A stretch of DNA of 64,000 bases. Source: Octopus bimaculoides (taxonomy: Eukaryota). Location: the NCBI RefSeq assembly GCF_001194135.2, contig NC_068994.1:39904097-39968096 (forward strand), in the 5' to 3' direction. Made by a program: the position numbers and the translations under genes. The stretch's first letter is position 1. Each line of letters starts with the position of its first letter. Shown piece after piece: positions 11,956-60,471 of the stretch. The notes beneath the pieces are model-generated. The model saw only the letters and a list, made by a program, of their open reading frames with translations. It was not told where the DNA came from and ran no database searches.

Positions 11956-13193
11956 ACAGGTCATTAAGAATGAAAAGTTTGATTTTCTAATGAACCAAGT
12001 TTGACAGTCATTAGATCTAAGCTTTTATCCTGAAAATTCTTTGTTTTACAACATTGAAGAGTTACATCATCACTTTTTGAAATGCAATTTATAGTGTCTG
12101 ATTATATTGTGAACCTATGGATAGATCAAAAATTCGTGTTGTTTATGAATATGAGTTCCATTGTGGAACCAATGCATCCCAGACAGCTCGAAACACCAAT
12201 GAGGTGTTTGGTGAAGATGTGGTAAAGGAGCAAACTGTACGTCAATGGTTTGAGAAGTTCCCGTCTGGTGACTTTAATCTTGAAAATCAGCCCCATGGTA
12301 GACCTGAGACCAAGGTGGATAATGATAAGGTGGAAACTGTAGTAGAAGTAGATACATCTCAAACTATGCATGAGTTAGAGGCAAGGTTGGATGTTTTGAT
12401 TCCAACTGTATTGGACCATCTGAAACAAATCAGCAACATAAAGAATCTGGACAAGTGGGTTCCACACAAACTGAATGAGCATCAACTGACATGTCATCTT
12501 GAAACTTGCTGTTCTTTGCTGCCACGGCATAAAAGTGAACCATTTTTGTCTCATATTGTTACGTTTGATGAAAAATGGGCTCTTTTCAACAATAGCAAGG
12601 ATTCTGCATGGTGGTTGGATAGAGACAAAGTGCTAAAACACAATCCAAAACAGAATATTCACCAAAAGAAGCTAATGGTGTCTCTTTGGTGGTCCAGCGC
12701 TGGTGTCATCCACAACAGCTTCATGAAACCTGGTAAGTCAATTACAGTGGATGTATACATCAACCAGTTGGATGAAATGATGAGTGAACTTGCAATTAAA
12801 CAACCGAGATTGGTCATTAGAGACAAGCCAATTCTCTTGCAAGACAATGCTCAACCATGTTGCACAAAGAACGCTACTCAAATTACAGGAGCTGAATTTG
12901 GAAGTACTCTGTCATCCACTACATTCACCAGACTTTGCACCAACTGACTATCATGTTTTCCAGGCATTAGACAACATTTTGCAAGGAAAAAATTTCAAAT
13001 CTGAAGAAGATGCAAAAACAGCCTTTCATGATTTTATCCCTTCTTGCTCTCCAGAAAAATAAGATATCAACAAAATGGCAAAATTGTGTTGATAATTTAG
13101 GTGCAAACTTTGATTAACTGCATTGCTTTTTGTTGAGATAGAGTAAAATATACTTTAAGTTCAAAATTGGACATTTCATTCTTAATGACCTGA
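11956..13193 (+). mobile_element. Full-length inactive mariner transposon (D34D, Hsmar1/cecropia-like)
   Basis: TIR core CAGGTCATTAAGAATGAAA at 11957-11975, inverted at 13174-13192, with TA at both flanks. Transposase from 12117: HTH region, WVPHKL, TFDEKW, LLQDNAQP, then a frameshift near 12858 into HPLHSPDFAPTDYHVF, stop at 13062. Confidence 0.93.
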
Positions 13194-18367: not shown

Positions 18368-19281
18368 CTAGAATAATAATCTAACACTAAATTCCATTTG
18401 CAAAGTTTATGATTTTAAGTATTACTGCACAAACACAGCCCCACAGATGTGCTCAAAGATATACAACAATCCACTCAGGAATGCATGCACAAAACCATTT
18501 GATACAAACAGTATGTATTTATAGACCAGTTCTTGCAAAAGTAATTATTTTTTAATGAATTTAACTTGAGAAACATGTGCTCTGTTAAACAATATCAGTT
18601 ATCATGAATAACAATATTTCTTAAATTTAAAAATTGTGTACATACACAAATGGTTTGTTTATAATGCTTTAAATACTTTCAGTTTTGAACAATATTTATA
18701 CACACACATGCATATTTTAGTCATCTATCTATAAATATATACATATATATATAGACATACACACACATATACACAAATATATATATATACAGATACATAC
18801 ATATGGACATAAAATTAATAACCATTATTATTACATTATTACTAATAGTTTACTAATTTACAGATGTTGAATGTGTCTGTGTCTGTGTCTAAGTGCACGT
18901 GTGTGTGTGAGTGTGTATAAGTATGTGCATGTGCACATGCGCATGTGTGTAGCATCAGTAAATTAGCAAAATTATAGTAATAATTATTGAGGAATAATTT
19001 TAAGAAATTTTAAAATAAATTATTACTAATCTTTTAACACAAATATCATTCAATATACTGAAATGCAGACTTTAATTAATTAAAAATCACAAGAAGGAAA
19101 GAAAACGATACACTTAAGTATATAAGCTACAACTAAAATATATGATATAATATTTAGTTTGTTATTGTTTTAAAAGACATATTAGCAGGAATTACAACCA
19201 ATTACTTATTCAAACATTATTAAAGTATAGATATCAGAAACGATGTTACAGCTATGAAATTAATAAAATTTATTTACTTAC

Positions 19282-21687
19282 AGGAATATTTCCACTGGTA
19301 AGTGTTTGACAGTGGATCTCAATTGAAGGATCCCGGAGTTTTTGGCTTGATTTATGTTCTAAGGAAAGATTTCCTCTAGACCACATGTGAGGCAGATCTT
19401 CATCTTTGTCAATGTTTTGTAAGACATCAGGGCTCTCATGAATAGATGAAACTTGCTTTGCACAAGAATATTCTGATTCTGTATTCCTGCCAACATGGCG
19501 TTTCTGTGGATCTGTTCTAAATATATGTTGGCTGCCTTGTAGATTGTTTCTTCTGACAATGCAGATAGTTATGGAGACAACCAGTAATACTGACACTGTC
19601 ACTGCAGCAACAATTATTATAATAAATAGATTAATATGTATTTTGTCATCTGATTGTAAATTAACTGCAGTAAATTTTGTTGAAGATTTGTTACTTACAG
19701 TCAATGTTAAAGACAAAGTAGTTGTTGCTGATAAAACTGGAGTACCACTGTCTTTGACGAAAAACTTGAGTGCATATGATCCAGCATCGTTTTGGTAAAC
19801 TGTACGAGAAAAGGACAAGACGCCAGTGTATGGATTCACTGAAAACAATTGTCTATTGTTACCTTTCATTATTCCATACTTCAGAAAGGCATTCTGCCGA
19901 ATATCTCTGTCTGAAGCTCTTAATGTTGTTATATCATTGCTACTCTGAGGTTGGTAGTAAACATCAAGACTGAAAGGATCCACACTGGGAAAGACAAAAT
20001 ATGGAGCATTGTCATTTTCATCCATAACTTCGACAATAACATTTGCTGTATCATTTAACGAAGGGGTTCCATTGTCCTTTACTAAAACTTTGAATTTATA
20101 AATACTCTGCTGCTCCCGATCTAATGATTGTTTTGCTAAAATAAATCCATAGTCAGAAATTTCAAAAGGAAGAACATGCTGGTTACTGCTAAGTAAAGCA
20201 TATGTAAGGTCTCCACCAATCCCTAAGTCAGGATCTGTAGCATTAATGAACCCAACAGGGAAATTAGACTTTTCGTTTTCATATGTTAAAAATTTGAATG
20301 TTTCTTTTGTGAATTGTGGCTTTACATCATTGACATCAGTTACTTTGAGAGAAAACTTATGTTCTGTTTTCAAAGAAGGAGTTCCTCTGTCACTGCAAGT
20401 TATTGTGAAATTTATTCTACTTTCACTTTCTCGATCAACAGTCTTCTTTACTGATACTTTGTATCTCTTCTGACCAAGACTCTGAAGAGTGAACTTATTA
20501 TGCTGGAGGTCACATGTCACTTGTCCATTCAAACCAATATCATTGTCAACAACTTTCACATATGCAATGAAGCTGCCAACTTCCATTGCTTCAGATATTG
20601 TTGCTGTGTTTCCAGTTAATTCTGAAAAATTTACTTCAATCACTGGAGCATTGTTTTGTTTATTGATAATATTTACCACAACTGGTACAACAGAGCTCAG
20701 AGGAGGACTGCCATTATCTCTGGCTTCAATAAATAGTTTATAAGTTTGTTTCTTTTCTGGTTTAAATTTTTTGCGAAGAAAGATTTCTCCAGTATTTTTT
20801 TTTATTTCAAAAAACGATTTTGCTCTATCAGATGTCATGGAACTAAAATAGTATGATACATTTCCATTTTTACCTGAATCTAAATCAGTAGCTGACAAGA
20901 TAAGAACTGGTATCTCTTTTGCTTGTCTGTTATTCACTGTAATGTTGTAAATGTCTTCAGAAAATATTGGTGGATTGTCATTTTCATCTGTAACTGATAT
21001 TTGAACATCCAAAATACCATGTTTTGATGGAGTACCCCCATCTTTAGCAATTATTTGTAACATATAATTGTCTTTTATTTCTCTGTCTAACTTATTTTCT
21101 AATGTTATACTTAGAGAGTAAGAACTGTCGACTCTTCTAGAAACAGCTAAAGTGAATGGGTCATCTTCCTGTTTTATTAATTCATAAGAGATTTGTGAAT
21201 TTAATAAATGAACATCTTTATCTACAGCATTTGGTATAGCACGCATAGTTCCTCTGCCATCTGTTTCATCAAAGTTTATATTTACTTCATTATCTGGAAA
21301 AATTGGTTCATTATCATTAATATCTTCTATAATAACCTTCACCTCTAAAATTTTGGCAAATGATTTTCCTTTTCTCACAGCAATATCGACCATGACTGAG
21401 CACTCAGTGTTGTACTTACAGAGGGACTCAGCATCTAGTGACTTAGCAGTGTAAAGTCTTCCAGTTTTAGAAACATTAAACAATAAGTTTCCTATCTTAT
21501 CTTCCTGGAGTTGGCTAAACCATATCAAACTATGATCTTTAGATGAAATGCTCTCCATGAATCTAGTATCTATGCCTAAATCACCAAAATATATTCCTGG
21601 ATTTTCATTTTCATTTACATGGTATGTAAAATCTACACATTCATAGGAATGCATGCAAAACAGCAACATACACACCTGCATTAACAT
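19282..21687 (-). CDS. Protocadherin, large ectodomain+TM exon (signal peptide, EC1-EC6, TM, proximal cytoplasmic region)
   Basis: 805-aa ORF (19270-21687). Hydrophobic N-terminus MLMQVCMLLFC. Cadherin linkers DINDNEPIF, DENDNPPIF, NKQNNAPVI, DVNDVKPQF, DENDNAPYF; LDRE/VDRE and DxD motifs; EC1 C-X5-C (CKYNTEC) typical of protocadherins; TM INLFIIIIVAAVTVSVLLVVSITICIV followed by RR. Strong phase-0 donor CCT|GTAAGT at 19282/19281, three codons before the ORF stop, so the true exon probably ends at 19282. Confidence 0.95.
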
Positions 21688-23681: not shown

Positions 23682-24066
23682 NNNNNNNNNNNNNNNNNNN
23701 NNNNNNNNNNNNNNNNNNNNNNNNNNNNNNNNNNNNNNNNNNNNNNNNNNNNNNNNNNNNNNNNNNNNNNNNNNNNNNNNNNNNNNNNNNNNNNNNNNNN
23801 NNNNNNNNNNNNNNNNNNNNNNNNNNNNNNNNNNNNNNNNNNNNNNNNNNNNNNNNNNNNNNNNNNNNNNNNNNNNNNNNNNNNNNNNNNNNNNNNNNNN
23901 NNNNNNNNNNNNNNNNNNNNNNNNNNNNNNNNNNNNNNNNNNNNNNNNNNNNNNNNNNNNNNNNNNNNNNNNNNNNNNNNNNNNNNNNNNNNNNNNNNNN
24001 NNNNNNNNNNNNNNNNNNNNNNNNNNNNNNNNNNNNNNNNNNNNNNNNNNNNNNNNNNNNNNNNNN
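23682..24066. other. Assembly gap (largest of eight)
   Basis: N runs, mostly next to (TA)n, at about 2146-2209, 6245-6254, 13198-13262, 23682-24066, 41944-41953, 48699-48707, 56468-56842 and 59665-59967. Confidence 0.98.
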
Positions 24067-25741: not shown

Positions 25742-26140
25742 AACTCGATTCAGATGCAAAATTGTGAATTGGGAAGTTTTACATCGTTGTTTGATGTTTT
25801 AACACTAGCATCATGGGTCCATCCAACAGTGGAAAAAGCTGTATTTTAAGATCTATTAGAAACGGCCTTAGGTGGCCAAAAGAGATGCTAAGCTTCTGAT
25901 AATTTCACATTCGGAAGCTGCATTGATAAAACACTAATATACACAGATGCGATGTGGTTCACAACAAACAACGTTAAAGAAGCCAAATGTATCATGGAGG
26001 GTACAGCAATATATATAAATATCAAACATCAAAACGAGAGAATACTAAAAAGAACTCCATGCCTATCAAGCTCAAATGTCGAACCTTACGAAGTCCTACT
26101 TCAAGACAAAAAAGCACTAGAAAACAGAATATTCTTGTCT
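25742..26140 (+). pseudogene. Endogenous parvovirus-like element: degenerate NS1/Rep SF3 helicase domain
   Basis: Walker A NTSIM-GPSNSGKS (GPSNSGKS at 25816-25839). After a frameshift near 25890: DNFTFGSCIDKTLIYTDAMW (Walker B region), EAKCIMEGTAIYINIKHQ (B'), RTPCLSSSN (motif C) and KALENRIF (arginine finger). Order and spacing match parvoviral NS1. Confidence 0.85.
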
Positions 26141-28379
26141 CATTACTGTCGCTTGTCAATGGTAAGTGTGTCTGCATGCACTCTTACACTAATTGTAACC
26201 TACATGTAATATTAATACATGTATAAGACATAATTACTACATGTTGTTTAGTGTAATAAAAACGCAAGAGGATGCGGTGGAGTACCTAACTCAGTGTTTT
26301 GCACACTCGAGATGAGCAAAATGTTATGAAAACATTGCATTCAGAGTGATTTGCAAGTGCATAAGGACCTCTAGGGAGGAATGTACAGAAAAAAAAATTA
26401 TTGATGAATCTTTAATTTTACCAATCGATAGATATGTAACTTATATTTAACTACAGTTTGCTTATGAAACTTAAAATATTTTCCCTCATCGTTTTTTCAG
26501 AGAAATTTTTTCAGTGGAAGTTTCAGATTTTGAATATGGGTAAAATATCACCCAGGAATTCTGCAATATCACCCAGGAATTCTGCATCTCTGTCATCTGA
26601 AAACCTTGATATAAGAATGATAGCTACCTTACCTTTAGAAATAATTTGAGATTGTGCCAGTCATCATATCTGATTATGGCTATAAGCTGATCTTATCAAT
26701 GGTCAAATATGAACTAGTTCACTCAGCTTTAATAAATACATTTTATAACAAAGTTGTAGTTGCTGAAGCCACACCTAATTTGCAGTTGTTTGTTGGTGTT
26801 ACTTCCATTAATTGACTTGAGTGTAAGTCATACCACTTTTCCTTGATTTTAACTGAAAAGTTGAGAAATAATTTATATGTGGGGCTAACCTAAAACTATG
26901 AAGGAAAAAAATTCACACCATGATTTAACTCTAAATTAAGGGTGAGACTTGTATATGTGTGTAACTTATACACAAGTAAATATGGTAAGTTCTAGACTTC
27001 CATTATAACTCTGTTCACATCTAGAATGCCTTAAATCACCACCAGTATCTGACTGATTGTTATTCTCTGTAGACCCCACAAGGATGAAAGAAAAAAAGCT
27101 TGACCCCAGAAAGCTTGGTACTCAGAACATAAAGGGCCATAACTAAATACAACAAATATTTTTGCCAATGCCTTAATGATTCTACCTGTTCTGAAATAGT
27201 GGAAAACTGACTCAAATTCAAAATAACACTGAGATGAACATATGATAAATAATAATTTTGTATAAAATTCATTTAAAAAAAAAAAAAGCAATCTACTTGA
27301 ATAAATATTATATTTGTAAGCATAGTTTTCCAAACCAGTTTAGGTTTCATTACAAGATATCTTCATTTTTGTTATACTTAAGCTCTCATTCAGCTATATA
27401 ATAAGACTGACCAAATTTCCCTTTCTGTGGATTTTTTAGTTTCATATTCATATTAAAGTGTGTATGAAGGTATTTTAGGCAACTTAATTAAAGTCAAATA
27501 CTAATACATTAAAATCCACTTGATAATCTAACCCACTTGATGCTACATTTGATTCTGTGCTGCAAGACCTTTCATTCTAAAATATTCCCATCCAAGTTAA
27601 TACCTTCTACATTACTATGTTAAGATATTTTTCACTTTATCTTCCAAACATAAACTTAAAATTGAAAAACAACAGGTATTGACTAAATGTCTATAAATTC
27701 TTTATTGCCAAAATTAACTGAAATGCATGGACAAGGTATTTTCACCAATTGTATAATCAAAAACTATTAAACAGCTTAATTTGAAATAAGATAAAATCTT
27801 CAGTAAGACAGTTTTAAACAAGATAGCAATACTACTTGCTACTAGAACATAAGGTGATCACTATATAAATGTTTTGTATACCAAACATATCAAACTAATA
27901 TCTAATTATGCTGCAAAGTATATTCTACTTCCCCTAAAGCATTCTAACAGGAAAATATAAGACAAATTACTAAACTGCTAAAAGACCCCAAAACTTTTCT
28001 TATGAAGAAAAAGAAATATGAAAAAGATGATTTAACAATTTTCAAGTTTTATGGATTAGAAATAGCTAAAGTGTATTAAAATTAAATAGTTAGCTAAGTA
28101 AATGAGATAGCTTAATTCTGAATAGTCAAACTTCTATGTACAAAAACTTTAGGTAAAGAATATATTATCTTTTAATATATTTATAGTAATTTGAAAGAAA
28201 GTCATTGCTCTGAATTAAAGAAAATGTGTATATGTTTATACATGTACATATGTATAGAGATAATAATAATGATAATATATCTGTATGTAAATGAGTGTGC
28301 ATATGTGTATATCTTGTGTATGTGTGTGCTTACATATAGTCATATATATATATCGGCATGTATTTATATGTATAAACAC

Positions 28380-30141: not shown

Positions 30142-30355
30142 TTGTTTCAGTATATGTTTTCCTGTCAGTCGTTAGAGAAGATGTGTATCCTGCTGTAGAG
30201 TTAGTTAAATAGTAACTGCTACTGTGGCATCAGTATTATGGTGTGTGATATAGAACTATGAAAGAGAGATCTGCAGTCCTATCAAGCAGTGTGCATATGT
30301 GTGTGTATGCAATGCCTGCTGCAGCCAATGACTAGCTGTCAGAGAGTCACATGGA
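30142..30355 (-). promoter_or_regulatory. Candidate promoter and non-coding first exon of the 19282-21687 protocadherin
   Basis: Unique, less AT-rich island between AT-rich flanks. NF-Y-type GCAGCCAATGA (CCAAT at 30325-30329), TGACTC (30344-30349) and E-box CACATG (30348-30353) upstream on minus; canonical donor CAA|GTAAGT at 30142/30141. Confidence 0.35.
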
Positions 30356-56339: not shown

Positions 56340-57902
56340 GTATATATATATATGTATATATATATGTGTATATATATATGTGTATATATATATGTGTATA
56401 TATATATATGTGTATATATATATATGTGTATATATATATGTGTATATATATATGTGTATATATATATNNNNNNNNNNNNNNNNNNNNNNNNNNNNNNNNN
56501 NNNNNNNNNNNNNNNNNNNNNNNNNNNNNNNNNNNNNNNNNNNNNNNNNNNNNNNNNNNNNNNNNNNNNNNNNNNNNNNNNNNNNNNNNNNNNNNNNNNN
56601 NNNNNNNNNNNNNNNNNNNNNNNNNNNNNNNNNNNNNNNNNNNNNNNNNNNNNNNNNNNNNNNNNNNNNNNNNNNNNNNNNNNNNNNNNNNNNNNNNNNN
56701 NNNNNNNNNNNNNNNNNNNNNNNNNNNNNNNNNNNNNNNNNNNNNNNNNNNNNNNNNNNNNNNNNNNNNNNNNNNNNNNNNNNNNNNNNNNNNNNNNNNN
56801 NNNNNNNNNNNNNNNNNNNNNNNNNNNNNNNNNNNNNNNNNNATATATATATATATATATATATATATAAACATTCACACAGATTATATGCATATGCAAG
56901 ATATACACTCAGTCATCATCATCATCATCATTGTTGTCATCACCATCATCACTAACATCCTCATCGTTGTCGTTATCATCATAATCATTCTCTGCAGCAG
57001 CAGCATTCTTGCTTTACATCCACTTTCCATACTAGCATGGGTTAGATGGGATGTTGCTACTCTCCTTGTTGGGTTTGGATTCCACAGCCCTTCTCAACAC
57101 CAACCACTTTACAAAATATACTAGGCTCAAGCTCTTGTGGTGCAAACACTAGAGAAGCTGCATCTTTGGTAAGGCTAAGGTGTTCCCTACCTAAGCCCAC
57201 AAGGAATTGAAACCATGATCTCGTGGTTGTGTGTACAACAGCCTAAACATTAGATCATGCATCCTCGAATAAAACCCACATATCACAACAAAAATATTCT
57301 AAGTTGTTGTATTGCTGTCATGTTTTACAAATAATTCAAATTTTATGACTAACATGAAGACCCACACAAAAAAAAAAAAAATATGGATATTTATGTTTTC
57401 AAAGAACAAAATCATAATAGACACATATTGCATTCTTTCATATGTGATGCTTACAGGCTTCCATAGGTGCATGTTATTCAGAAAAGGCCCACAACTTAAA
57501 GCCCAGTCAAGCCACACAATGTGAAAGTGACATACATCAGTCTGCAGCTGATTACCTAAATTGCCCTCTTCTTCATCCTCTGTATTTGACAAGTGCTTAT
57601 TCTATTATCCCTATGAGGATGAAAAGCAAATTTGACTTTAGCAGGATTTGAACTGCAGATGTAAAACAGGATGTAACTAAATACTGCAAGGCATTTTTGT
57701 CAAGTGCTATAACAACCCTACCTCAACCTCATGAACATAAATATACAAAGGAATAAAGAAATAAAAGATAATTTGGTACAAGCTTGCATAGTTCTATGGT
57801 CAAGAAGTTCTAGATGATGGTGATGAGGATGATGATGAAGGCAGTGATGCAAAGGACAATGACAAAGATATCAATGACAATGTCAATGAAGGTGGTGGTG
57901 GA

Positions 57903-58779: not shown

Positions 58780-60471
58780 TGACAATCCATTGTTTACGAT
58801 GACGAGGGTTCCAATTAATCTGATCAACGGAATAGCCTGCTCATGAAGTTAACAGGAAAGTGGCTGAGCAGTCCACAGATACATGTGCCTTTAATATAGT
58901 TCTCAAGGAGATTCAGTGTGACAGGGCTGGCCCTTTGAAATTCAGGTATCACCCATTTTTGCCAGCTGAATTGACTGGATCAACGGGAAATAAACTGTGT
59001 TCCTCAAGGACAGGACATGTTGCTGGGAATCGAACTCACAACCTCGCAATCATGAGCCAAATACACTAACCACTAAGCCACTCACCTTCACATGAATCTG
59101 ACAAGTGTATGTGAGTATATTTTCATAATATTGCTGAAAATTTCAGTGCACAATGAAGAGATAAGTACTAAAGAAAAAGAACAGCTGAAAATAAAAAAAG
59201 AAAAGAAAAAAAAACACTGATGGCTATTCGTTATTGACCAAAGATAAGTGAAATTAAGTGTAACAAATGTATAATAAAACATTCACAATGAAATTATATT
59301 TATTAAGCTTTATATAATTTCTAAATAAAATCTTTCAAATTAACCACATTCTTTTGAAGTAAAATCAGCAATGTCCATCAGTGCAGGTTCAAATACACTC
59401 AAAAAATATTTCCAAATAAAATTTTCTTCATAATTACAATAATTATCATTTATTTTATTTTATTTTTATTTTTAATTTTTTGTATTTAAATTATTTTATC
59501 AATTTTTATTTTTTATTTTTTTTATTTTTTTTTTTTTGCATTTGCTTTGTTTCTGATTTAAAATTAACTTAAAATATTACTACTACTACTGCTGCAGCTG
59601 TTGCTGCTGCTGCTGCTGATGATGATGATGATGAAGACAACAGGGAAAATAAATAATGATGACANNNNNNNNNNNNNNNNNNNNNNNNNNNNNNNNNNNN
59701 NNNNNNNNNNNNNNNNNNNNNNNNNNNNNNNNNNNNNNNNNNNNNNNNNNNNNNNNNNNNNNNNNNNNNNNNNNNNNNNNNNNNNNNNNNNNNNNNNNNN
59801 NNNNNNNNNNNNNNNNNNNNNNNNNNNNNNNNNNNNNNNNNNNNNNNNNNNNNNNNNNNNNNNNNNNNNNNNNNNNNNNNNNNNNNNNNNNNNNNNNNNN
59901 NNNNNNNNNNNNNNNNNNNNNNNNNNNNNNNNNNNNNNNNNNNNNNNNNNNNNNNNNNNNNNNNNNATATATATATATATATATATATATATACACGCAC
60001 ACACACACATACATACTTATATACATATGTATGCACACGCACATGCATATATATATATTTGTATAAAATACATTCCACAGAAGTGCCCCAAGATGTGGAC
60101 TACTTGAACTACAGCTCCAGCTCTAATTACTAATGGATACTGAAAAGGTGATAATGGAATACATTTCCCTGGATAATTGTTTCAAGAAAAAAAAGGTATT
60201 TGTAAGTGACAGTCTTACAAGGAATTCATATTAATCATGTGCAATAATTTGGGTTGACTTTTGGGATTTATGTATTTTCATTTTCTTTCTCTCCCACCTC
60301 TTCACAGATATTACATTTGCATGTCACATTTGATTATATATATATATATATATATATATACGTATATGTATGTGTGTGTGTGTTTGTATAAATGTGTATT
60401 TTATATATATATTATATATATATATATAAACATATATATATATATATATATGAATATATATATGTATTTAT

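What the first reader, a model, noticed from the sequence alone, without database searches (positions are those of the whole stretch)
25742..26350. Fossil parvovirus (densovirus/hamaparvovirus-like) NS1 helicase inside a protocadherin locus
Seen: on the plus strand, GPSNSGKS (25816-25839) is followed, after one frameshift near 25890, by NFTFGSCIDKTLIYTDAMW...EAKCIMEGTAIYINIKHQNERILKRTPCLSSSN...DKKALENRIF. The ORF track shows only the second half, without Walker A. Established: this motif order (Walker A, B, B', C, arginine finger) defines SF3 helicases of parvoviral NS1/Rep. Inference: EG...NIKHQ...R.P...S.N...D.KAL..R recalls crustacean/insect hamaparvovirus NS1 (IHHNV-like) more than vertebrate parvoviruses. 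This would record a germline infection by a virus lineage possibly not yet isolated from cephalopods. Walker B reads DA rather than DE, consistent with decay. If 30142 is exon 1, the element lies antisense within the first intron of the protocadherin.
Basis: partly seen in the sequence, partly recalled or inferred. Interest (0 to 1): 0.8.

Follow-up and report, generated by a model that had tools for sequence, protein, structure and literature searches.

The report
Parvovirus gene fossil in octopus DNA
A roughly 340-base broken remnant of a parvovirus replication (NS1 helicase) gene lies in non-coding octopus DNA about 4 kb upstream of a protocadherin gene; it is a real viral fossil of a familiar kind, and it belongs to a multi-copy cephalopod parvovirus family that no paper found here describes.

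Summary
On the + strand, window 25810-26146 encodes, in two reading frames, about 110 codons of a parvoviral NS1/Rep SF3 helicase, running from Walker A to the conserved arginine. The Pfam Parvo_NS1 match has E=1.5e-9 and the match to a family profile has E=7e-48. The piece is dead: it is cut off at both ends and carries one frameshift and one in-frame stop. No other NS1 or capsid remnant occurs anywhere in the 64 kb.

The host is an Octopus of the vulgaris/sinensis group. The fragment lies 4.1 kb upstream of a protocadherin start codon, on the opposite strand. Whether it sits in an intron cannot be told.

The fragment belongs to a discrete clade of NS1 sequences found so far only in a cuttlefish genome assembly and in unnamed sequencing-run assemblies. 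Outside that clade, the nearest relatives are unclassified metagenomic parvoviruses and a clam genomic ORF, at about 30-35% identity.

The "IHHNV/hamaparvovirus-like" label is not supported. IHHNV ranks no better than ambidensoviruses or B19. Fuller relatives also carry a PLA2 domain, which IHHNV-type viruses lack.

This is a new member of a known kind, of modest interest. The more interesting lead is the family itself: its capsid-like gene lies upstream of NS1, and some copies have uninterrupted NS1 ORFs.

The parts
25810..26146 (+). Endogenous parvoviral element: a fragment of an NS1/Rep gene (SF3 helicase core, Walker A through motif C to the conserved arginine), about 110 codons. It is broken by 1 frameshift and 1 in-frame stop and is truncated at both the 5' and 3' ends. 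Weak similarity may extend to about 25795-26160.
   Evidence: Pfam PF01057 E=1.5e-9. AAV2 Rep40 alignment. tblastx/tblastn against relatives delimit the span. Family-profile hmmsearch over all six frames of the window gives E=6.8e-48 and 1.8e-6 and nothing else.
25816..25839 (+). Walker A / P-loop motif (GPSNSGKS) of the NS1 fragment.
   Evidence: Read directly. The same motif is GxSNSGKS in the relatives P0005, P0010, P0172 and P0173.
19270..21687 (-). Neighbouring host gene: the large coding exon of a clustered protocadherin. Its ATG lies 4,108 bp from the element's outer bound (25795), on the opposite strand.
   Evidence: Pfam Cadherin x5 and Cadherin_2. 97% identity to O. sinensis protocadherin beta-15-like isoform X3 over residues 1-802. 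Distance.
23682..24066 (.). Assembly gap (run of N) between the protocadherin exon and the element, 1.7 kb from the element.

Best explanation
Window 25810-26146 is a non-functional endogenous viral element. DNA of a parvovirus that infected an ancestor of this octopus was joined into germline DNA, by analogy with other parvoviral EVEs probably through non-homologous end joining at a chromosome break. Only a piece about 340 bp long from the middle of the NS1 replication gene (the SF3 helicase core) was kept or survives. It has since drifted neutrally. It lacks the N-terminal HUH nuclease domain and the C-terminus, has no start codon of its own, is interrupted by one frameshift and one stop, and has lost the Walker B catalytic acidic pair. 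It therefore cannot make a helicase.

The source virus belonged to a discrete clade of parvoviruses whose traces are so far seen only in cephalopod sequence data. That clade is not assignable to any named subfamily with the comparators available.

Shown: the identity as parvoviral NS1, the extent, the breaks, the host context and the clade membership. Inferred: the integration mechanism, germline fixation, neutrality and the absence of a present function.
For: The only family above its Pfam cut-off is Parvo_NS1 (E=1.5e-9), and the best solved structure is AAV2 Rep40/68. Exhaustive HMMER gives 402 hits, with a tight group of 10 at E<=1e-30 and then a gap to E of about 1e-13. The window fragment is 77% identical to P0008, 72% to P0173 and 61-64% to two Acanthosepion pharaonis genome proteins, but only 29-36% to anything outside the clade. 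The NJ tree places it inside that clade.

Full-length members have a HUH motif, Walker A/B and Parvo_NS1 at E=1e-16 to 1e-18. All of the top 50 Foldseek neighbours are parvovirus or parvo-like NS1/Rep proteins. Adjacent capsid-like ORFs in relatives carry the parvoviral PLA2 domain PF08398.

The window holds no other NS1 or VP remnant. The flanks are unique, AT-rich host sequence (GC 0.30 against 0.36 in the element). The region from the protocadherin exon up to window position ~24400, about 1.4 kb short of the element, is collinear with another octopod assembly.
Against: Germline fixation is assumed from one assembly. The orthologous position in another species could not be read, because the syntenic locus L018 ends about 1.4 kb short of it. 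An assembly gap lies 1.7 kb away. No expression or small-RNA data were available, so a present role as an RNA source or regulatory DNA is not excluded. No ICTV reference set was at hand, so lineage placement rests on an NJ tree of mostly unnamed sequences and on Foldseek ranks.
Confidence: 0.86

Rival explanations
1. The fragment is exapted. It serves as a template for antiviral small RNAs (piRNA-like) or as a regulatory element of the neighbouring protocadherin, rather than being inert.
For: EVE-derived small-RNA immunity has been suggested for shrimp IHHNV EVEs (PMC11357303). The element lies antisense and 4.1 kb upstream of a protocadherin ATG. The family is multi-copy in cephalopod data.
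Against: Nothing in the sequence shows selection. The piece is short, broken and not repeated in the window. No RNA data could be consulted.
Confidence: 0.07
2. The fragment is a copy of a host repeat or transposon that once captured parvoviral genes and spread inside cephalopod genomes. On this view the many copies reflect intragenomic amplification rather than many infections.
For: Dozens of related protein clusters occur in sequencing-run assemblies. Copies in different loci share the same unit and the same right-hand end, for example L002 and L017.
Against: The shared unit consists only of viral parts: a terminal hairpin, a PLA2-bearing capsid-like gene and NS1. No transposase or transposon ends were seen. 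Flanks are not shared between loci. Copies differ by 25-50% in protein sequence and some keep uninterrupted NS1 ORFs of 514-568 aa, which fits repeated integration from evolving viruses better. The window's flanks are not repeated.
Confidence: 0.05
3. The fragment is an assembly artefact or contaminating viral DNA wrongly joined into the scaffold.
For: An N gap lies 1.7 kb upstream. No gene with the window's ORF product is on record in other assemblies.
Against: It is only about 340 bp long, carries disabling mutations and lacks the rest of the virus, unlike a contaminant contig. It is embedded in more than 1.6 kb of ungapped host-like AT-rich sequence on each side.
Confidence: 0.02

Closest known systems
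Parvovirus-derived endogenous viral elements of invertebrates (for example the non-infectious IHHNV-type EVEs of Penaeus monodon, and the parvovirus-related sequences reported from six molluscs)
   Same: Germline-integrated, fragmentary, frame-broken pieces of NS1 without terminal hairpins, lying in host non-coding DNA (PMC11357303, PMC5013282).
   Different: The host is a cephalopod, and no cephalopod is named in the main text of those papers. The sequence is not IHHNV-like: it shows 12-16% identity at structural-alignment level, and its family has a PLA2 domain.
Acanthosepion pharaonis genome proteins P0208 and P0210 (UniRef name: 'Parvovirus non-structural protein 1 helicase domain-containing protein')
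   Same: Same clade of NS1 sequences, 61-64% identical to the window fragment. They also sit inside large host scaffolds of 0.85 and 1.5 Mb.
   Different: The cuttlefish locus L017 keeps a nearly unit-length element of about 3.6 kb, with a terminal hairpin, capsid-like ORFs and NS1 pieces. The window keeps only about 340 bp.
AAV2 Rep40/Rep68 SF3 helicase (PDB 1S9H, 1U0J, 7JSI and others)
   Same: Same fold family and motif order. The window piece aligns to Rep40 residues 138-205 across Walker B, B' and motif C. The full-length relative P0172 aligns over about 175 residues at E=1.2e-8.
   Different: About 30% identity or less. The window copy is a broken fragment, not a protein. No phylogenetic closeness to Dependoparvovirus is implied, because the PDB holds almost only Parvovirinae helicases.
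Unclassified 'parvoviridae sp.' from bird cloacal viromes (Turdus, Motacilla and Tarsiger samples) and a Mactra antiquata (clam) genomic ORF
   Same: Nearest sequences outside the cephalopod clade in HMMER, BLASTP and Foldseek.
   Different: Only 24-35% identity to the family's NS1. Their own taxonomy and hosts are unresolved.
Metagenomic parvovirus genomes with non-canonical gene order: MT138329 and MT138334 (structural ORF upstream of NS; PMC9001828), and the 'megaparvovirus-like' lineage (5' PLA2 ORF, unknown ORF, NS1, VP; PMC13426907)
   Same: In the cephalopod family, a PLA2-bearing ORF and a second ORF precede NS1 on the same strand.
   Different: The cephalopod unit is about 3.6 kb and has nothing conserved downstream of NS1. 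Those genomes are 6.4 kb to more than 7 kb, and the megaparvovirus-like lineage carries a further VP gene. Sequence relatedness to them was not tested, because no comparator sequences were held.

Membership tests
Parvoviridae NS1/Rep SF3 helicase (Pfam PF01057) | Profile match above the curated threshold | tested here: met
   37.7 bits against a cut-off of 20, E=1.5e-9, profile positions 148-210. Relatives score E=1e-16 to 1e-18.
Parvoviridae NS1/Rep SF3 helicase (Pfam PF01057) | Motif order: Walker A, Walker B, B', motif C (..TSN), conserved arginine | tested here: met
   Order read directly and aligned to AAV2 Rep40 and to the family. The window copy has lost the Walker B acidic pair.
Parvoviridae NS1/Rep SF3 helicase (Pfam PF01057) | N-terminal HUH rolling-circle nuclease domain in the same protein | tested here: not met
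   Absent from the window, which holds a fragment only. A HUH motif is present in the full-length relatives P0172 and P0173.
Endogenous viral element (EVE) | Virus-derived sequence contiguous with host DNA on both sides | tested here: met
   More than 1.6 kb of ungapped host-like sequence lies on each side. Sequence from the protocadherin exon to ~24400 is syntenic with another octopod assembly. A host protocadherin lies 4.1 kb away.
Endogenous viral element (EVE) | Inherited and fixed: present at the orthologous site in other individuals or species | not testable with these tools
   The O. sinensis locus was not retrievable. L018 ends about 1.4 kb short. No exact ORF product is on record.
Endogenous viral element (EVE) | Loss of coding integrity | tested here: met
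   One frameshift, one in-frame stop and truncation at both ends.
IHHNV-like / 'hamaparvovirus' lineages (Penstyl-, Hepan-, Chaphama-, Ichthama- and Brevihama- groups; now split among Hamavirinae, Hepanvirinae and Penbrevirinae) | NS1 SF3 domain clusters with these viruses | tested here: not met
   By Foldseek, IHHNV ranks 26 and 29 (12-16% identity), level with ambidensoviruses and B19; ichthama/chap-type sequences rank 7-25, behind unclassified ones. The sequence named as a chapparvovirus, P0068, lies in another NJ clade. No formal phylogeny with ICTV references was possible.
IHHNV-like / 'hamaparvovirus' lineages | Capsid protein without a PLA2 domain (PMC11357303, PMC9896142, PMC13426907) | tested here: not met
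   In the relative L002, the ORF next to NS1 hits PF08398 Phospholip_A2_4 at E=3.5e-8. This was tested on relatives, because the window has no capsid remnant.
Densovirinae | PLA2 in VP1 | tested here: met
   PF08398 in L002 ORF 151-1167. Relatives only.
Densovirinae | NS1 clusters with densoviruses; ambisense or NS-then-VP gene order | tested here: inconclusive
   Ambidensoviruses appear from rank 16 at E of about 1e-16, no better than other groups. The gene order in relatives is the capsid-like gene followed by NS1 on one strand, which is neither canonical pattern.

The most novel reading that the evidence does not exclude
The window fragment is one trace of an undescribed, deep-branching parvovirus lineage specific to cephalopods, at genus level or above. 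Its unit has a terminal hairpin, then a PLA2-bearing capsid-like gene, then NS1 on the same strand, which reverses the canonical NS-then-VP order. Some members (uninterrupted NS1 ORFs of 568 and 514 aa in L016 and L019) are either very young insertions or viruses still circulating in cephalopods.
Probability: 0.35. Interest if true: 0.6.

Novelty: new member of a known kind. Interest (0 to 1): 0.35.

Why it matters
Parvoviral fossils are common in animal genomes, so one more short fragment changes little. The value lies in the context it opens.

- No cephalopod parvovirus or cephalopod parvoviral EVE is described in any paper I could find in the held library.
- The same NS1 clade turns up in both an octopus and a cuttlefish genome, and in many unnamed sequencing runs. 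This indicates that parvoviruses have infected coleoid cephalopods.
- If orthologous copies can be placed on the cephalopod tree, they would give minimum ages for this virus lineage.
- The unusual gene order and the PLA2 domain in fuller copies bear on how parvovirus genome layouts and the PLA2 module evolved.
- For genome annotation, the fragment should be masked as viral-derived and not called as a gene.

Tried and rejected
Steps deliberately not taken:
The two frames were searched separately.
- align_proteins prints a majority consensus by itself. These lines were not used, copied or saved.
- One early script printed raw BLAST pairwise alignments as they stand. After that, scripts printed only coordinates and scores.

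Searches that gave nothing:
- Exact-product look-ups for the window's NS1-piece ORF and for the protocadherin ORF were not on record.
- The O. sinensis locus could not be fetched through P0233.
- The syntenic 'Argonauta hians' locus L018 was fetched, but it ends about 1.4 kb short of the element's position and has no NS1 hit in 111 kb.
- IMG/VR viral contigs and JGI metagenome contigs hold no relatives of the family.
- The capsid-like ORFs of L002 gave no PDB match and no Pfam match beyond PLA2.
- No hairpin was found at the right-hand end of the units.
- Nothing is conserved downstream of NS1 between loci.
- The window's flanks are not repeated within the window.
- Flanks of the run-assembly contigs match no held host DNA.
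- Literature searches for cephalopod, octopus, cuttlefish or squid parvoviral EVEs found nothing relevant.
- The bird-virome papers do not let the nearest named relatives be assigned to a clade.

Rejected explanations: Polinton/D5-type or host helicase, and an IHHNV-like origin.
Full report
1. THE OBSERVATION

The + strand of the window carries GPSNSGKS at 25816-25839 in one frame.

- The second stretch alone matches Pfam PF01057 (Parvo_NS1) at E=1.5e-9, with 37.7 bits against a gathering score of 20, over profile positions 148-210 of 271. The only other Pfam match is a sub-threshold chance hit.
- In the PDB, the second stretch matches AAV2 Rep40/Rep68 at E=1.4e-4. It aligns across Walker B, motif B' and motif C.
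- The short Walker A piece gives only generic P-loop hits on its own.
- A profile built from relatives finds both pieces, at E=6.8e-48 and E=1.8e-6, on adjacent profile positions 172-192 and 201-284. It finds nothing else in any of the six frames of the whole 64 kb.

2. EXTENT AND STATE

Comparison with relatives by tblastx and tblastn delimits the homology to 25810-26146. Faint similarity may reach about 25795-26160. The span covers about 110 codons of an NS1 that is 514-568 residues long in the fullest relatives.

The remnant gene is broken as follows:
- one frameshift;
- one in-frame stop;
- truncation at both ends, so there is no HUH nuclease domain and no C-terminal part.

No capsid remnant exists in the window.

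The fragment has GC 0.36 against 0.30 in its flanks. The flanks are not repeated elsewhere in the window. An assembly gap lies 1.7 kb away, at 23682-24066.

3. HOST AND CONTEXT

The 805-codon ORF at 19270-21687 (minus strand) is a protocadherin, with five cadherin repeats and a Cadherin_2 domain. It is 97% identical over its full length to 'protocadherin beta-15-like isoform X3 [Octopus sinensis]'. It is 91% identical to a protein labelled Argonauta hians, and at most 72% identical to other octopod paralogues. The window therefore comes from an Octopus of the vulgaris/sinensis group. The exact species is not proven.

The O. sinensis protein starts at the same ATG as the window ORF, at 21687. 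The element lies 4,108 bp upstream of that ATG, on the opposite strand.

A GTAAGT exists on the minus strand near 30142. Whether a non-coding exon ends there cannot be tested without transcripts. In the syntenic locus L018, the annotated gene range starts at the coding exon. The statement 'inside a protocadherin locus' is fair. The statement 'in its first intron' is undecided.

4. RELATIVES

A word-indexed search found only five hits, all short PF01057 fragments from sequencing-run assemblies, at 62-77% identity.

An exhaustive HMMER search with their alignment found 402 proteins at E<=1e-3. Ten formed a tight group at E<=1e-30, followed by a gap to E of about 1e-13. A second profile search listed 61 family members. 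Two of them are from the Acanthosepion pharaonis (pharaoh cuttlefish) genome assembly, on scaffolds of 0.85 and 1.5 Mb. UniRef names them 'Parvovirus non-structural protein 1 helicase domain-containing protein'.

Identity of the window fragment to its relatives:
- 77% to P0008;
- 72% to P0173;
- 66% to P0172;
- 61-64% to the two cuttlefish proteins;
- 29-36% to everything outside this group.

In an NJ tree of the SF3 region, the window falls inside the clade, next to P0173 and P0008, and the clade sits on a long stem. DNA identity to the fetched loci is only about 70% over about 200 bp, and no flank similarity was found. None of them is therefore the orthologous locus. No relatives exist in IMG/VR or in JGI metagenome contigs.

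5. LINEAGE

Named sequences nearest to the clade are:
- NS proteins of unclassified 'parvoviridae sp.' from bird cloacal viromes (Turdus pallidus, T. hortulorum, Motacilla cinerea, Tarsiger cyanurus);
- a hypothetical protein in the genome of the clam Mactra antiquata.

These share 24-35% identity with the full-length family member P0172. 'Army ant associated chapparvovirus 6' is more distant, at 31% over 155 residues, and lies in a different NJ clade.

I predicted the structure of P0172 from an alignment of family members. The helicase half is confident (pLDDT 80-96) and the N-terminal half is poor. I then searched the model against BFVD. The top 50 hits listed are all parvovirus or parvo-like NS1/Rep proteins:
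- ranks 1-6 are unclassified 'parvoviridae sp.';
- ichthama- and chap-type viruses appear from rank 7;
- ambidensoviruses appear from rank 16;
- IHHNV is at ranks 26 and 29 (E of about 1.6e-15, 12-16% identity);
- human B19 is at rank 41 (E=6.9e-15).

There is thus no special affinity to IHHNV or to the former Hamaparvovirinae.

A second, independent test concerns the PLA2 domain. IHHNV- and hepan-type viruses and the novel hama-type viruses lack a PLA2 domain (PMC11357303, PMC9896142). PLA2 is regarded as limited to Parvovirinae and Densovirinae, apart from horizontal transfers (PMC13426907). In the relative L002, the ORF adjacent to NS1 matches PF08398 (Phospholip_A2_4) at E=3.5e-8.

The family is best described as an unassigned, invertebrate-associated parvovirus clade. 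A proper phylogeny with ICTV references could not be run, because no such sequences were available from the tools.

6. THE FULLER RELATIVES (outside the window)

Five loci show the same collinear unit: L001, L002, L016, L019 and the cuttlefish genome locus L017. In each, a capsid-like region of about 1.9 kb is followed after about 120 bp by NS1 on the same strand. The capsid-like region begins with the PLA2 domain and a glycine-rich stretch. In the two short contigs, L016 and L019, only the C-terminal end of the capsid-like region is visible upstream of NS1.

In L017, a strong hairpin lies immediately to the left of the capsid-like gene. It has 42-nt arms, a free energy of -37 kcal/mol and z=-8.6, and none of 200 shuffles folded as well. 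It looks like a relic of a terminal telomere.

Nothing conserved follows NS1, and no matching hairpin was found at that end.

The capsid-like gene is in two pieces and NS1 in at least four in L002. L017 likewise shows only short ORFs across the unit. L016 and L019, however, carry uninterrupted NS1 ORFs of 568 and 514 codons, with a HUH motif, Walker A and Walker B.

A capsid gene upstream of NS on one strand is not the canonical parvovirus layout. Two precedents exist:
- a lineage with a 5' PLA2 ORF and an unknown ORF before NS1 (PMC13426907).

I could not test relatedness to either. I could also not show that the second ORF is a jelly-roll capsid, because it has no Pfam or PDB match.

7. HOW IT MOST LIKELY WORKS

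It does not work. The most likely history is as follows. A parvovirus of this clade infected germline cells of an octopus ancestor. A piece of its DNA was captured at a chromosome break. The insertion either became fixed, or at least is present in the sequenced individual. It has been decaying since.

With only two disabling lesions in about 340 bp, any age estimate is very imprecise. By rough inference only, this corresponds to a few percent neutral divergence, that is, millions to a few tens of millions of years.

Shown here: viral origin, extent, breaks and context. Inferred: the capture mechanism, fixation, neutrality and age.

The rivals are each unlikely on present evidence, for the reasons given in their entries. 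They are a small-RNA or regulatory role, spread as part of a host repeat, and an assembly artefact.

8. NOVELTY AND VERDICT

Parvoviral EVEs are widespread. Parvovirus-related sequences have been reported from six molluscs (PMC5013282). The cuttlefish copies are already auto-annotated in UniRef. I found no paper in the held library describing parvoviruses or parvoviral EVEs of cephalopods.

The finding is a new member of a known kind. It is real and correctly recognised as NS1, but its viral lineage was mislabelled and its interest overrated. I give it an interest of 0.35.

The lead worth following is the cephalopod family as a whole. That means its distribution, its ages, its gene order, and whether the uninterrupted copies are young insertions or a living virus. 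All of this can be addressed with descriptive sequence work.

Noticed in passing
L001, L002, L016, L017 (7051-10519), L019: In fuller relatives of the window fragment, a PLA2-bearing capsid-like gene lies upstream of NS1 on the same strand, separated by about 120 bp. This reverses the canonical parvovirus NS-then-VP order. The unit is about 3.6 kb, and nothing conserved follows NS1.
   Followed up: partly
L017:6804-6907 (Acanthosepion pharaonis CAHIKZ030000499.1): A strong G+C-rich hairpin (42-nt arms, -37 kcal/mol, z=-8.6) lies immediately left of the capsid-like gene. It is probably a relic of a parvoviral terminal hairpin retained in an EVE. No counterpart was found at the other end.
   Followed up: partly
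L016:379-2085 (SRR8281675) and L019:367-1911 (SRR11869386): Two run-assembly contigs carry uninterrupted NS1 ORFs of 568 and 514 codons, with a HUH motif and Walker A/B. They are either very young insertions or an exogenous cephalopod parvovirus. The species of the runs is unknown.
   Followed up: partly
window 12117-12947 (+): A 276-codon mariner/Mos1-type transposase ORF (HTH_48 plus a partial DDE domain). It is probably a truncated transposon copy.
   Followed up: partly
window 19270-21687 (-): The large coding exon of a clustered protocadherin, 97% identical to an O. sinensis protein. The remaining C-terminal 63 residues of that protein are not encoded in the window.
   Followed up: yes
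L018: Proteins labelled 'Argonauta hians' (GCA_054771915.1) carry O. sinensis-style LOC names and are 91% identical to the window's protocadherin. Intergenic DNA still aligns at 72-80%. This is closer than I would expect for Argonauta against Octopus, so the labelling or annotation transfer deserves a check.
   Followed up: no
window 23682-24066, 56468-56842, 59665-59966 and smaller runs: Assembly gaps (runs of N) flanked by long TA/CA microsatellites. The region around the element is rich in simple repeats.
   Followed up: no
window 26544-26586: A perfect tandem duplication of a 21-bp unit, 400 bp downstream of the element.
   Followed up: no
No ORF and no transcript evidence supports it.
   Followed up: partly
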